A DNA stretch of 64,000 nt, taken from Octopus bimaculoides. Lineage: Eukaryota. Under the pieces are notes generated by a model, which saw only the letters and a program-made list of their open reading frames with translations, ran no database searches and was not told the DNA's origin. Positions 18,401 to 21,400 of the stretch are shown in pieces; within the stretch, counting starts at the first letter, position 1, and the number at the start of each line of letters is the position of its first letter. Position numbers and translations under genes: made by a program. Location: NCBI RefSeq assembly GCF_001194135.2, contig NC_068989.1:32678542-32742541 (forward strand), written 5' to 3'.

Positions 18401-21400
18401 GATCCTTTTCTTTCCCTTTCCTCACTCCAAAATGATATTGACCATTGACCGCACTTCCATATTTGTTCACCGGTTACTACACTCACCTCCTCTTCTATCT
18501 CTAACCATCTGCCACTCTCCACTTCACGCTCTTATGAACCTACATACTCTTTCCCATCTTTAGTCCCTATTCTCTCTAATACTCATCTTCTTATATCTTA
18601 AGACACTGCCATCTTCATCTCCTTTGCAACTACTCCCTCCCACCCTTATATGAAGTCATCTCCTTCTCCAGCAGTGTCCATTAATGAGTGAGAGTCACAG
18701 TTGTTGATTGAAATTTTTGTTGTCTCGGTTATTGCTTTATATTGCCAGGAGTCAAATTGTATTCTCTTGTTTCCTTTCCCATCACTTTACCTTATCACCA
18801 CTCAAACTTACCAGTGGTATGTGTATCTCTAGTTATTAAATTTCCTAAACTTTATGGATATTTTGGTTTGTAGGTGCACTGTATCCCTGTGTGACTTGAG
18901 AGGCAACTAAAAGGATTGGTACCAAGAAGTACATCTGACTGTAGAATACTGCCTCAAAAATTCCTAACCAGCCAATGCCTTCATAGAAAAGGTGTAGAAA
19001 ATGTGATGATAATGATGTCATCATCATCACCACATACAATTCTTTACATCTTTCTGATATAAAAGGATCAGTACATGGTATTTGTAATGTTCTTTCTTCT
19101 AACATATGGCTGTAAAATATATTATATGTCAAATATCTAATTTATCAGGTCATTAAGAATGAAATGTCCAATTTTCTTATGCACCAAGTTTGACAATTCT
19201 TTGTTTTACAACATTGAGGAGTTACATCATCACTTTTCAGAATGCAATTCATGGTGTCTGATTATATTGTGTGTTTTCTCTTGTAAATCAATTTTTGTGA
19301 ACCAATGGATAGATAAAAAAATTTGTGTTGTTTATGAATATGAGTTCCCTCGTGGAACCAATGCATCCCAGACAGCTTGAAGCATCAATGAGCTGTTTGG
19401 TGAAGATGTGGTGAATGAGCACACTGTACGTCAATGGTTTGAGAAATTCTGGTCTGGTGACTTTACTCTTGAAAATCAGCCCCGTGGTAGACCTGAGACC
19501 AAGGTGGATAATGATGAGCTGGAAACTGTAGTGGGAGTGGATACATCTCAAACTACTCATGAGTTAGCAGCAAGGTTTGATATTTCGATTCCAACTGTAT
19601 TGGACCATCTGAAACAAATTGGCAAGGTAAAGAAGCTGGACAAGTGGGTACCACACAAACTGAACGATCATCAAATGACACATTGTCTTAAAACTTGCTG
19701 TTCTTTGATGTCACAGCATAAAAGCGAACCATTTTTGCATTGTATTGTTACATGTGATGAAAAATGGATTCTTTTCAACAATAGCAAGCATTCTGCACGG
19801 AGATTGGATAGAGAAGAAATGCCAAAACACAATCCAAAAAGGAATATTTACCAAAAAACGCTAATGCTGTCTATTTGATGGTCCAGTGCTGGTGTCATCC
19901 ACTACAGCTTCATGAGACCTAGTAAGTCAATTACAGCAGATATATACATCAGCCAATTAAATGAAATGATGAGTGAACTTGCAATTAAACAACCGAGATT
20001 GATCAACAGAGACAGGCCAATTCTCTTGCAAGACAATGTTTGACCACATGTTGCACAGAGAACGTTACTCAAGTTACAGGAACTGAACTTGGAAGTACTC
20101 TGTCATCCACCATATTCACCAGACCTAGCACCGACTGACTATCAAATTTTCCAGGCATTAGACAACTTTTTGCAAGGAAAAAACTTCAAATCTGAAGAAA
20201 ATGCAAAAACAGCCTTTCACGATTTCATCACCTCTTGCTCTCCAGAATTCTTCGCTGCCAGCATAAATAAACTACTGATAAAATGGCAAAATTGTGTTGA
20301 TAATTTAGGTGCATACTTTGATTAACTGTATTGCATTTTGTTGAGATAAAGTAAAATTAACTTTCAGTTCAAAATTGTACATTTCATTCTTAATGACCTG
20401 ATATCATTTTCTCATTGCATTTTAGGTACATACGGGACAGTTTACAAGGCTAAAAATCGAGACTCCCATGAAATAGTAGCTTTGAAAAGAGTTCGTTTGG
20501 ATGATGATGATGAGGTAAATTATTCTAAAGTTTTAGTAGATCTACCAACTTTCATAGTTTTGTTTTGAGGGTTATTATTTTCTGTACTTTCTCATAACTT
20601 GCTGTATGAAATCCATAACTATGATTTTCTCATGGTACCTATGTTTCTTAACACCAATTTTATTTAAGTTATATTTCATTATGTCAAAAATATTAATTCA
20701 TTTGAAATGTTTACTGACCTTATTTCTAATATTATTTATGATACATGACTAATATACCATTTATCATTATCATCATTTTATATTCATTTTTCTATGCTGG
20801 TATCTGTTGATCAGCTCTGTTCCAGCACAGTGTCTTGTCACGTGTGCTCACTTTTTATCTCCTTCATAAAATTCAGCATAGAAGAGCCATGTCTTCTTTA
20901 GCCTTCTTTTTCTTCATGTGCATTCTATTTGGATCACTTAATTTTTCTTCACTTAAAAAGTCATCTTTCAAACACTTCATATTCTTCTCTTTTGCTCATT
21001 ACTGTTGGTTCTTTTAATACCCATTTCTTGTGTCAACTAGAAGCATCAGTTGTGGCGTGCAAGAGAGACGATTGCGCTGGTATGGACATGTGGTGAGAAT
21101 GGAGGAGGATAGCTGCGTGAAAAAGTGCCACACCCTAACAGTTGAGGGAACCCGTGGAAGAGGTAGGCCCAGGAAGACCTGGGCTGAGGTGGTGAGGCAA
21201 GACCTTCGTACATTGGGCCTCACCGAGGCGATGACTACGGACCGAGACCTTTGGAAATGGGCTGTGCGTGAGAAGACCCGGCAAGCCAAGTAAGATCGTT
21301 GCCAGTACCCCTGGACTGGTTCTTGTGCGGGTGGCACATGAGATGCACCATTTTGAGCGTGGCCGTTGCCAGTACCGCCTGACTGGCTCCCGTAGGATTT

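What the first reader, a model, noticed from the sequence alone, without database searches (positions are those of the whole stretch)
19144..20425. Mariner terminal inverted repeat appears to supply the branch point of CDK5 intron 1
Seen: the right TIR ends at 20401, and only the TA TSD plus 22 nt (TCATTTTCTCATTGCATTTTAG) remain before exon 2. The best YTRAY branch motif, CTGAT (20398-20402), uses the last base of the TIR as the branch A, 24 nt from the 3' splice site. Alternative motifs (CTTAAT, A20393; TGAC, A20396) are also inside the TIR. There is no AG between 20368 and 20423. The only host-side candidate (CTCAT, A20414) is 11 nt from the AG end, shorter than usual. Inference: the insertion displaced the original branch point by 1.26 kb and was tolerated because the TIR replaced it, i.e. 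a DNA-transposon end exapted as a core splicing signal in a conserved neuronal kinase gene.
Basis: partly seen in the sequence, partly recalled or inferred. Interest (0 to 1): 0.75.

Follow-up and report, generated by a model that had tools for sequence, protein, structure and literature searches.

The report
Dead mariner beside CDK5 exon 2 acceptor
An old, inactive mariner transposon sits 24 bases upstream of exon 2 of the CDK5 kinase gene, between the likely original branch point and the splice acceptor; its end could supply a new branch point, but its two ends more probably pair and fold the element out of the way, and no RNA data were available to decide.

Summary
A 1,257-bp mariner (19145-20401) has 31-nt inverted repeats and a TA duplication. 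It ends 2+22 nt before the exon 2 acceptor of a CDK5 orthologue. No AG lies between 20368 and 20423.

- Rebuilding the empty site puts a host CTAAT (A19140) 26 nt from the AG, so a branch point was probably displaced by 1,259 bp.
- CTGAT is not the best repeat-borne motif; TAATGAC (A20396, 29 nt) is.
- A CTGAT-quality motif arises in 52-75% of random local sequences placed at the site. A TAATGAC-quality motif arises in about 10%.
- Intact relatives share these motifs, so they did not evolve here. The only left/right repeat difference is a derived change in the right repeat.
- The two repeats form a 33-bp duplex (-41.9 kcal/mol, pairing probability about 1). Exposing the repeat-borne motifs costs 14-22 kcal/mol; the host motifs cost about 0.5.

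My favoured reading (0.35) is that repeat pairing loops out the element and host branch points remain in use. A repeat-borne branch point (0.30) stays open. Transposon-borne branch points are already mapped in Alu exons. Interest is modest.

The parts
6436..6472 (+). CDK5 exon 1 (ATG to GAA G; the donor GT is at 6473)
   Evidence: tblastn with human CDK5 and direct reading
6473..20425 (+). CDK5 intron 1: 13,953 nt, phase 1, GT...AG
   Evidence: Same position and phase as Batillaria CDK5 intron 1, which is about 222 nt
19097..19103 (+). Host TTCTAAC (branch A19102). It has the best U2 match of all candidates (score 10). It lies 64 nt from the AG in the empty-site reconstruction, inside that allele's 96-nt AG-free zone
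19135..19141 (+). Host ATCTAAT (branch A19140), the likely ancestral branch point. It lies 26 nt from the AG in the empty site and is now 2 nt 5' of the base of the repeat stem
   Evidence: P(unpaired) 0.74; opening cost 0.4 kcal/mol
19143..19144 (.). Left copy of the TA target-site duplication
19145..19175 (+). Left terminal inverted repeat: TCAGGTCATTAAGAATGAAATGTCCAATTTT
   Evidence: conserved in relatives
19145..20401 (+). Whole mariner element: 1,257 bp, sense to CDK5, single copy in the window
19305..20325 (+). Transposase pseudogene. The ATG at 19305 is out of frame with the rest because of an indel just after it. In-frame TGA stops are at 19378 (Arg in relatives), 19876 (Trp) and 20041 (Arg). 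The natural TAA stop is at 20323. HTH_48 and Transposase_1 domains are present and DD34D spacing is readable. CpG observed/expected is 0.30
20354..20367 (+). Acceptor-like site inside the mariner: AATTAAC (A20360) followed by CTTTCAG. Its AG at 20366-7 is the last AG before the true acceptor
20371..20401 (+). Right terminal inverted repeat. T20378 is a derived substitution that gives the single mismatch in the stem
20388..20402 (+). Repeat-borne branch-like motifs: TCTTAAT (A20393, 32 nt), TAATGAC (A20396, 29 nt), ACCTGAT (A20401, 24 nt)
   Evidence: P(unpaired) about 0.001 and opening cost 14.5-21.7 kcal/mol
20402..20403 (.). Right copy of the TA target-site duplication
20404..20425 (+). 22 nt of host sequence: pyrimidine-rich tract and acceptor AG (20424-5). 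It holds the host-side candidates A20406 (TATCAT, 19 nt) and A20414 (TTCTCAT, 11 nt)
20426..20514 (+). CDK5 exon 2 ([30 protein letters not shown])
45021..45088 (+). CDK5 exon 3
51502..51619 (+). CDK5 exon 4
60419..60514 (+). CDK5 exon 5
63857..63931 (+). CDK5 exon 6 (the gene continues beyond the window)

Best explanation
What it is (confidence about 0.97): a long-dead DD34D mariner. Its transposase has three TGA stops and a frameshift, and its CpG content has decayed to the host level. It inserted at a TA 24 nt upstream of the exon 2 acceptor of a CDK5 orthologue. That site lies between the probable ancestral branch point (CTAAT, A19140, or TTCTAAC, A19102) and the polypyrimidine tract.

How splicing most likely survives (the confidence given below applies to this part):
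- In the pre-mRNA, the two repeats plus the palindromic TA duplications pair into a 33-bp stem. This loops out the 1.2-kb element.
- The stem hides the AGs and branch-like motifs that lie within the repeat arms. The 1.2-kb interior, with its own AGs, is looped out.
- Its base rejoins the host sequence, so the original branch point is again about 2+22 nt from the acceptor. The spliceosome keeps using host adenosines.

Shown here: the anatomy, the empty-site reconstruction, and the thermodynamic dominance of the stem. Inferred: that the stem forms in vivo before U2 commits, and that the spliceosome tolerates it.
For: - Anatomy.
- Empty-site reconstruction: ATCTAAT is 26 nt from the AG and TTCTAAC is 64 nt from it, within a 96-nt AG-free zone.
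- The repeat stem appears in both the minimum-free-energy and centroid folds of 1,361 nt.
- Pair probabilities are about 1.0 for 30 of 33 positions, and the duplex energy is -41.9 kcal/mol. Repeat-borne heptamers have P(unpaired) of 0.001-0.003, against 0.74 for ATCTAAT.
- Opening costs are 14.5-21.7 kcal/mol for the repeat-borne motifs and 0.4-0.5 kcal/mol for the host motifs.
- The left repeat is about half free before the right repeat is transcribed, so no kinetic trap is predicted.
- Literature: stems between branch point and 3' splice site shorten the effective distance and mask AGs in yeast (PMC3239191). Tc1 inverted repeats pair in vivo, as shown by A-to-I editing and by excision that depends on the repeats being able to pair; deleting a repeat or un-inverting it abolishes excision. 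HSMAR2, a human mariner, is excised by the same system in human cells (PMC12779559).
- CpG decay to the host background suggests the copy is old and the gene has lived with it.
Against: - No RNA data of any kind were available, so the folding result is an equilibrium prediction only.
- From my own knowledge, older work (Eperon et al. 1988) suggests that in vivo hairpins with long loops often fail to form, and helicases such as DHX9 unwind inverted-repeat duplexes.
- The precedents for stems between branch point and acceptor are yeast stems of tens of nucleotides, not a 1.2-kb loop.
- A rigid helix starting 2 nt after A19140 may clash with SF3b unless its AU-rich end frays.
- The linear sequence offers good branch motifs in the right repeat at ideal distances.
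- The time since insertion at this site is not established, because a decayed copy can be mobilised in trans.
Confidence: 0.35

Rival explanations
1. One reading: the right repeat itself provides the branch adenosine (A20396, A20393 or A20401). U2AF on the 22-nt host tract recruits U2 to the nearest good motif, which is now transposon sequence. This is a pre-adapted, fortuitous replacement of the displaced host branch point.
For: - TAATGAC (29 nt, score 9), TCTTAAT (32 nt, score 8) and ACCTGAT (24 nt, score 6) lie in the canonical window. About 90% of human branch points lie 19-37 nt from the 3' splice site (PMC7969005).
- The zone from 20368 to 20423 is free of AG.
- Only about 10% of random local sequences would offer a motif as good as TAATGAC.
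- Transposon-borne branch points are real: 154 were mapped in exonized Alus (PMC4315302), and MIR inserts created used branch points in minigenes.
Against: - The motifs are predicted to be buried in a 33-bp duplex, with an opening cost of 14.5-21.7 kcal/mol.
- The motifs are ancestral repeat features shared with intact relatives. The terminal CTGAT is, if anything, weaker than the relatives' CTAAT.
- There is no sign of selection on the right repeat, which carries the only derived change.
- A CTGAT-grade motif is expected by chance in 52-75% of cases.
Confidence: 0.3
2. The insertion never separated the working branch point from the acceptor. A host adenosine downstream of the insertion is used: A20406 in TATCAT (19 nt) or A20414 in TTCTCAT (11 nt). 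It may always have been used, so the mariner is simply an upstream intronic passenger.
For: - Both have U at -2. TTCTCAT scores 7 and is accessible, with P(unpaired) 0.79.
- Other introns of this gene have their best motifs at 15-18 nt. In intron 3 the AG-free zone is only 22 nt.
Against: - 11 nt is shorter than almost all mapped metazoan branch points and leaves only about 9 nt of pyrimidine tract.
- TATCAT pairs poorly with U2 (score 3-5). It also overlaps the stem base, with an opening cost of 3.8 kcal/mol.
- The empty site had better-placed motifs upstream.
Confidence: 0.15
3. The insertion is not accommodated at all. It weakens exon 2 recognition through exon skipping or use of the internal CTTTCAG acceptor at 20367. 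It persists as a mildly deleterious, possibly polymorphic or recent trans-mobilised allele, or another CDK5 copy compensates.
For: - From my own knowledge, insertions in the branch-point-to-acceptor interval are a known cause of exon skipping in human disease.
- An acceptor-like AATTAAC...CTTTCAG lies 58 nt upstream of the true acceptor.
- Nearly identical repeats (1 mismatch in 31) are compatible with a fairly recent transposition of an already decayed copy.
- Only one assembly was available, and it has many gaps.
Against: - The copy's CpG content has decayed to the host background. It has 13 CpGs against about 51 in relatives, which is most simply explained by long residence.
- All CDK5 exons in the window are intact and highly conserved.
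- The junction lies in gap-free sequence, with the nearest N runs at 12294 and 21415.
Confidence: 0.1
4. The paired repeats trigger SOS splicing, a spliceosome-independent excision that requires AKAP17A, CAAP1 and RTCB. This removes the mariner from the pre-mRNA and restores a near-ancestral intron 3' end, which the spliceosome then removes.
For: [quoted passage not shown] It acts on Tc1, Tc3 and Tc4 in C. elegans and on HSMAR2 in human cells (PMC12779559). The repeats here pair strongly. The small indels it leaves would be harmless within an intron.
Against: [quoted passage not shown]
- The presence of the factors in this unidentified host is unknown.
- HSMAR2 excision sites lay 100-393 nt from its repeats. 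At this locus that would remove exon 2 or the host branch region.
Confidence: 0.05

Closest known systems
Alu- and MIR-borne branch points (Mercer et al. 2015, PMC4315302; Kralovicova et al. 2021, PMC7969005)
   Same: A branch-like motif that is part of the transposon consensus (CUAAU in antisense Alu; CT(A/G)AT and TAATGAC in this mariner repeat) sits at working distance from a pyrimidine tract. The motif is pre-adapted, not evolved in place.
   Different: Those cases are retroelements that create new or alternative exons, or competitors in minigenes, and they have mapped lariats. Here a DNA-transposon repeat would have to serve an ancient constitutive exon. No lariat evidence exists, and the motif is predicted to be base-paired.
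Structure-mediated shortening of the branch point to 3' splice site distance in yeast COF1 and UBC13 introns (Gahura et al. 2011, PMC3239191)
   Same: A stable stem between branch point and acceptor reduces the effective distance and masks intervening AGs. This is exactly what the repeat stem would do here.
   Different: The yeast stems are short local hairpins evolved in place. Here the stem would be a by-product of transposon architecture closing a 1.2-kb loop in an animal intron, and it is untested.
SOS splicing of DNA transposons (Zhao et al. 2025, PMC12779559)
   Same: A Tc1/mariner-type element in a host transcript, with base-pairing of the inverted repeats as the feature that neutralises the insertion. 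That work also gives in vivo evidence that such repeats pair.
   Different: SOS splicing was seen for exonic and UTR insertions, not for the two intronic ones tested. It cuts and ligates RNA. The loop-out model needs no cutting.
Splicing of transposons out of host transcripts using signals in their ends (maize Ds/dSpm, C. elegans Tc1; from my own knowledge and as cited in PMC12779559)
   Same: Transposon termini interact with the splicing of the host gene and soften the effect of an insertion.
   Different: Those elements sit in exons and are removed as new introns through cryptic donor and acceptor sites. Here the element is inside an existing intron, and only the branch site is at issue.
Mariner elements of the Hsmar1/SETMAR-like group (DD34D mariners)
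   Same: TA duplication, repeats of about 30 nt starting T(C/T)AGGT, a 339-aa transposase with HTH_48 and Transposase_1 domains, and DD34D spacing. Identity is about 50% to the SETMAR transposase domain and 67-71% to unnamed intact relatives.
   Different: This copy is inactive and CpG-depleted. Subfamily assignment was not tested by phylogeny.

Membership tests
mariner (Tc1/mariner superfamily, DD34D) | TA target-site duplication flanking the element | tested here: met
   TA at 19143-4 and 20402-3
mariner (Tc1/mariner superfamily, DD34D) | Terminal inverted repeats of about 28-33 nt | tested here: met
   31 nt with 1 mismatch; 0 expected in shuffles. The same repeat occurs in relatives L001, L002 and L004
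mariner (Tc1/mariner superfamily, DD34D) | Mos1-type transposase domains and a D,D(34)D catalytic triad | tested here: met
   Pfam HTH_48 (3e-12) and Transposase_1 (2e-20). The residues D in CDEKW, D in QDN and D in PTDY, with 34 residues between the last two, were read from the translation
mariner (Tc1/mariner superfamily, DD34D) | Intact open reading frame (autonomous copy) | tested here: not met
   TGA stops at 19378, 19876 and 20041, and a frameshift after the ATG at 19305. This makes it a dead copy; it does not remove it from the family
CDK5 orthologue | Sequence identity to CDK5 and conserved intron positions | tested here: met
   161 aa that are 90-95% identical to named CDK5 proteins. 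The five intron positions within the window (after GE|G, DDDDE, IVR, TVK and INK) and the donor after SAE (exon 6; that intron runs off the window) fall at the same points in the protein as in Batillaria CDK5. The C-terminal half lies outside the window
Exapted transposon-derived branch point | Branch-like motif of transposon origin at canonical distance in an AG-free zone | tested here: met
   TAATGAC at 29 nt, TCTTAAT at 32 nt, ACCTGAT at 24 nt; no AG from 20368 to 20423
Exapted transposon-derived branch point | Lariat branch mapped to a transposon nucleotide | not testable with these tools
   No RNA data. The source genome and close relatives could not be reached
Exapted transposon-derived branch point | Motif accessible to U2 (single-stranded) | tested here: not met
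   P(unpaired) 0.001-0.003 and opening cost 14.5-21.7 kcal/mol at equilibrium. This is a prediction only
Exapted transposon-derived branch point | Signature of selection on the co-opted segment (more conserved than the left repeat or the interior, or optimised in place) | tested here: inconclusive
   The outer 24 nt of both repeats are identical. The one difference is derived in the right repeat. The motifs are shared with relatives. The rough neutral expectation of about 1.5 mismatches is close to the 1 observed
Exapted transposon-derived branch point | No competing host branch point | tested here: not met
   A20406 and A20414 are host-side candidates. A19140 and A19102 become available through the stem
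Structure-bridged branch point to 3' splice site interval (COF1/UBC13 type) | Stable stem between branch point and acceptor that restores a canonical effective distance and masks AGs | tested here: met
   A 33-bp stem of -41.9 kcal/mol, present in the minimum-free-energy and centroid folds. Its base leaves 2 nt plus 22 nt. The AGs at 19147-8 and 19157-8 lie inside the stem
Structure-bridged branch point to 3' splice site interval (COF1/UBC13 type) | Splicing depends on the stem (disruption and compensatory mutants) | not testable with these tools
   Needs minigenes or in vivo probing
SOS splicing substrate | DNA transposon with pairing inverted repeats inside a Pol II transcript | tested here: met
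SOS splicing substrate | Location in the mature-mRNA part of the transcript (exon or UTR) | tested here: not met
   The element is intronic. [quoted passage not shown]

The most novel reading that the evidence does not exclude
Transposons with terminal inverted repeats insulate themselves from splicing. Because the two repeats and the palindromic TA duplication zip into a helix whose base rejoins the host sequence, a mariner can land between a branch point and its acceptor, normally a lethal position, and leave splicing of an essential gene topologically unchanged. This would be a passive, intronic counterpart of SOS splicing. It would predict that such insertions close to acceptors are tolerated far more often than insertions of retroelements.
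Probability: 0.3. Interest if true: 0.6.

Novelty: new member of a known kind. Interest (0 to 1): 0.33.

Why it matters
Insertions between a branch point and its acceptor usually break a gene. A long-resident insertion there in a conserved, probably essential kinase gene is a natural experiment on how loose branch-site choice is in animals. It also tests whether RNA pairing of transposon ends can neutralise an insertion. If the loop-out model holds, it links transposon architecture to splicing robustness and complements the recently described SOS splicing. If the repeat-borne branch point holds, it adds a DNA-transposon example to the Alu and MIR cases. In either case the result applies to one locus and does not change any principle until RNA data exist.

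Tried and rejected
1. Identifying the source organism or a close relative, to compare an empty orthologous site.
- The CDK5 search gave at most 95% identity, to the gastropod Batillaria.
- The mariner search gave at most 71% and the LINE reverse-transcriptase search at most about 65%.
- Exact-protein look-ups of two window ORFs found nothing.
- Two metagenome DNA scans, one with the repeat and one with exon 2, found nothing.
- The host therefore remains 'an animal, probably a lophotrochozoan or mollusc', inferred only from CDK5 residues and composition.

2. Looking for other copies of this mariner in the window, to date the insertion. There are none.

3. Testing whether the right repeat is better conserved than the left. 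The single difference is derived in the right repeat, which rejects that prediction as stated. With one mismatch, however, the test has almost no power.

4. Scoring U2-branch duplexes with nearest-neighbour energies. All values were about 0 to -3.5 kcal/mol and did not discriminate, so a simple count of Watson-Crick and wobble pairs was used instead.

5. An Rfam scan and a tRNA scan of the window found nothing.

6. I considered and rejected the idea that the host flanks are themselves repeats. The segments 18281-19142 and 20404-21038 are unique within the window.

7. Lin et al. 2016 (PMC4691745) turned out to concern bridging between the 5' and 3' splice sites by AC/GT repeats, not branch point to acceptor stems. 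It is only loosely relevant.
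Full report
**1. What is there**

The window carries the 5' half of a CDK5 orthologue on the + strand.
- Exon 1: 6436-6472.
- Exon 2: 20426-20514.
- Exon 3: 45021-45088.
- Exon 4: 51502-51619.
- Exon 5: 60419-60514.
- Exon 6: 63857-63931.

All introns are GT-AG. The joined 161 residues are 90-95% identical to named animal CDK5 proteins. The best match is the gastropod Batillaria at 153 of 161. 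The Batillaria locus has exon boundaries at the same points in the protein and the same phase-1 intron 1. Its intron 1 is about 222 nt, against 13,953 nt here.

The finding's element is real.
- A 1,257-bp mariner lies at 19145-20401.
- Its inverted repeats are 31 nt long and differ at one position.
- It is flanked by a TA duplication.
- One reading frame holds a near-complete transposase with HTH_48 and Transposase_1 domains and readable DD34D spacing.
- The closest intact proteins are 67-71% identical. Identity to SETMAR (Hsmar1-derived) is about 50%.

The copy is dead.
- The ATG at 19305 is out of frame.
- There are three in-frame TGA stops: 19378 (Arg in relatives), 19876 (Trp) and 20041 (Arg).
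- It is strongly CpG-depleted, with 13 CpGs and observed/expected of 0.30. Intact relatives have 51-52 CpGs at about 1.0. The window background is 0.28.
- It has 4 CGN arginine codons, against 17 in relatives.

This points to long residence in a CpG-methylating germline. A decayed copy can be moved in trans, so the age of this particular insertion is not fixed by that evidence.

**2. Check of the observation**

- The right repeat ends at 20401, followed by TA and then the 22 nt TCATTTTCTCATTGCATTTTAG.
- The CTGAT adenosine, A20401, is 24 nt from G20425.
- A20393 and A20396 lie inside the repeat.
- A20414 is 11 nt from the AG.
- The last upstream AG is at 20366-7.

Two details need correcting.
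- I ranked candidates by complementarity to the invariant U2 branch-recognition sequence (2 points per Watson-Crick pair, 1 per wobble pair, six positions). The order is TAATGAC (A20396, 29 nt, score 9), TCTTAAT (A20393, 32 nt, 8), TTCTCAT (A20414, 11 nt, 7), then ACCTGAT (A20401, 24 nt, 6).
- A further host-side adenosine with U at -2 exists: A20406 in TATCAT, 19 nt from the AG.

**3. Was a branch point displaced?**

I rebuilt the empty site by removing the element and one TA. This gives ...aatatCTAATtTAtcattttctcattgcattttag|GT.
- ATCTAAT (A19140) is 26 nt from the AG.
- A perfect-core TTCTAAC (A19102) is 64 nt from the AG.
- Both lie in a 96-nt AG-free zone.

Both are upstream of the insertion point. 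The inference that the working branch point was pushed 1,259 bp away is therefore reasonable. It is not proven, because the downstream candidates A20406 and A20414 cannot be excluded.

**4. Is the repeat-borne motif special?**

I spliced 20,000 random 60-mers from this window, on either strand, into the same site.
- A motif at least as good as CTGAT appeared at 24-40 nt in 75% of trials, or 52% when U at -2 was required.
- A motif as good as TAATGAC appeared in 9-10%.

In this AT-rich genome almost any insert would offer a passable branch site.

The motifs are also not local adaptations. Intact relatives recovered from public assemblies have the repeat TA|TTAGGTCATTAAATATGAAATGTC(G/C)GATTTT. 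Their right ends therefore read ...TTTAATGACCTAA|TA. TAATGAC is shared. The relatives' terminal CTAAT is a slightly better U2 match than the CTGAT here.

The only left/right difference in this copy is C19168 against T20378. The relatives polarise it as a derived change in the right repeat. With one mismatch the test has little power. A rough neutral expectation, based on the single non-CpG stop, is about 1.5 mismatches. That figure is my inference.

**5.

I folded 19090-20450 as RNA. The repeats plus both TA dinucleotides form a 33-bp stem with one C-U mismatch. The stem appears in both the minimum-free-energy and the centroid structures.

In a 1,461-nt context:
- Pair probabilities are about 1.0 for nearly all positions.
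- The isolated duplex energy is -41.9 kcal/mol.
- The repeat-borne heptamers have P(unpaired) of 0.001-0.003.
- ATCTAAT has 0.74, TTCTAAC 0.76 and TTCTCAT 0.79.

Forcing the repeat-borne motifs open costs 14.5-21.7 kcal/mol. The host motifs cost 0.4-0.5 kcal/mol. Before the right repeat is transcribed, the left repeat is about half unpaired, so no kinetic trap is predicted.

If the stem forms, the proposed branch adenosines are hidden. The stem base also rejoins the host sequence: A19140 sits 2 nt before the stem and the acceptor AG 22 nt after it. That is essentially the pre-insertion geometry.

**6. Precedents**

- Stems between branch point and acceptor that shorten the effective distance and mask intervening AGs are experimentally established in yeast COF1 and UBC13 (PMC3239191).
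- Tc1/mariner inverted repeats pair inside host transcripts in vivo. Tc1 repeats are A-to-I edited. A spliceosome-independent excision system, SOS splicing, requires the repeats to be present and inverted so that they can pair, and scrambled repeats that still pair also trigger it, with reduced efficacy. It acts on Tc1, Tc3 and Tc4 in C. elegans and on the human mariner HSMAR2 in human cells. [quoted passage not shown]
- Transposon-borne branch points are already known. 154 mapped branch points lie in exonized antisense Alus, many at a CUAAU that is part of the Alu consensus (PMC4315302). MIR inserts created used branch points in minigenes (PMC7969005).

**7. Mechanism and ranking**

- Loop-out by repeat pairing, with continued use of host branch points: 0.35.
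- Host adenosine downstream of the insertion (A20406 or A20414): 0.15.
- Insertion impairs splicing and is a deleterious, polymorphic or recent allele: 0.10.
- SOS-type excision before spliceosomal removal: 0.05.
- The remainder is unassigned.

Several branch points may be used in parallel, as is common in animals.

Shown here: the anatomy, the empty-site geometry, the motif ranking, the chance levels, the ancestry of the motifs, and the thermodynamic dominance of the stem. Inferred: everything about what the spliceosome actually does.

The main caveats for loop-out are these.
- In vivo folding is not at equilibrium.
- From my own knowledge, long-loop hairpins often fail to form in cells (Eperon et al. 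1988), and helicases unwind inverted-repeat duplexes.
- A helix starting 2 nt after the branch adenosine may need to fray to fit SF3b.

**8. Novelty and value**

The mariner and its position are ordinary genome content. A transposon end only 24 nt from a constitutive acceptor of a conserved gene is uncommon but expected genome-wide. As a rough inference, about 100 nt of such intervals lie in this 60-kb window, with dozens of transposon insertions. That gives roughly a 5-8% chance per window and hundreds of cases per genome if neutral.

The loop-out reading would be a new variant of structure-assisted 3' splice site recognition and a passive counterpart to SOS splicing. Neither can be decided here. 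The locus is a good substrate for a small, decisive minigene and lariat experiment.

**9. What failed**

The source organism and any close relative could not be reached. No orthologous empty site, population data or transcripts could be examined.

Noticed in passing
window 20354-20367: Inside the mariner, a strong branch-like AATTAAC (A20360) is followed 6 nt later by CTTTCAG. This acceptor-like site lies 58 nt upstream of the true acceptor. If used, it would add 58 nt and shift the reading frame.
   Followed up: partly
window 19134-19140 with 20422-20428: In the minimum-free-energy fold only (not the centroid), the old branch region UAUCUAA pairs with UUAGGUA, which spans the acceptor AG and the first bases of exon 2.
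   Followed up: no
window 12651-13963 (+): Two adjacent ORFs of 209 and 213 aa lie in intron 1. The second ends in a motif that by eye resembles the hAT transposase C-terminal dimerisation region ([11 protein letters not shown]...LMFMKGN). Pfam gave no hit at E <= 0.01.
   Followed up: partly
window 372-2476 (+), 32097-34387 (-), 56562-57035 (-), 17000-18280: Fragments of non-LTR retrotransposons, with Pfam hits (RVT_1 above its gathering score; zf-RVT and Exo_endo_phos_2 below theirs) on ORFs in the first three ranges. Copies within the window are 68-76% identical to each other (17000-18280 is included on that similarity alone). The best database relatives of the reverse-transcriptase ORF at 56562-57035 are unnamed ENA contigs at about 55-65% identity (one short match, labelled E. 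coli by its source, reaches 73% over 82% of the query).
   Followed up: partly
window 21039-21612 and at least 10 other places (e.g. 30881-31973, 48093-48383, 55407-56035, 42370-42557, 1-82): A roughly 570-bp interspersed repeat family on both strands, at 70-95% identity. One 82-nt stretch (21532-21613) is 100% identical to window 1-82. Several copies carry a short ORF with the peptide ...[13 protein letters not shown](D/N)[12 protein letters not shown]...
   Followed up: partly
window, 13 N runs (e.g. 6592-7255, 11821-12294, 46592-46959, 61611-62276): The window holds 3,927 N in assembly gaps. Several gaps are flanked by (CA)n/(TG)n or other low-complexity runs, so this is a draft scaffold. 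One gap sits only 120 nt into intron 1.
   Followed up: no
window 6473-63856 versus L005: CDK5 introns are greatly expanded by repeats compared with the gastropod Batillaria. Intron 1 is 13,953 nt against about 222 nt, and intron 2 is 24,506 nt against about 220 nt. The exon boundaries fall at the same points in the protein.
   Followed up: partly
whole window; mariner 19145-20401: CpG observed/expected is 0.28 across the window. This suggests germline CpG methylation in the host. Many Arg to Cys, His, Trp or stop changes in the mariner fit CpG decay.
   Followed up: partly
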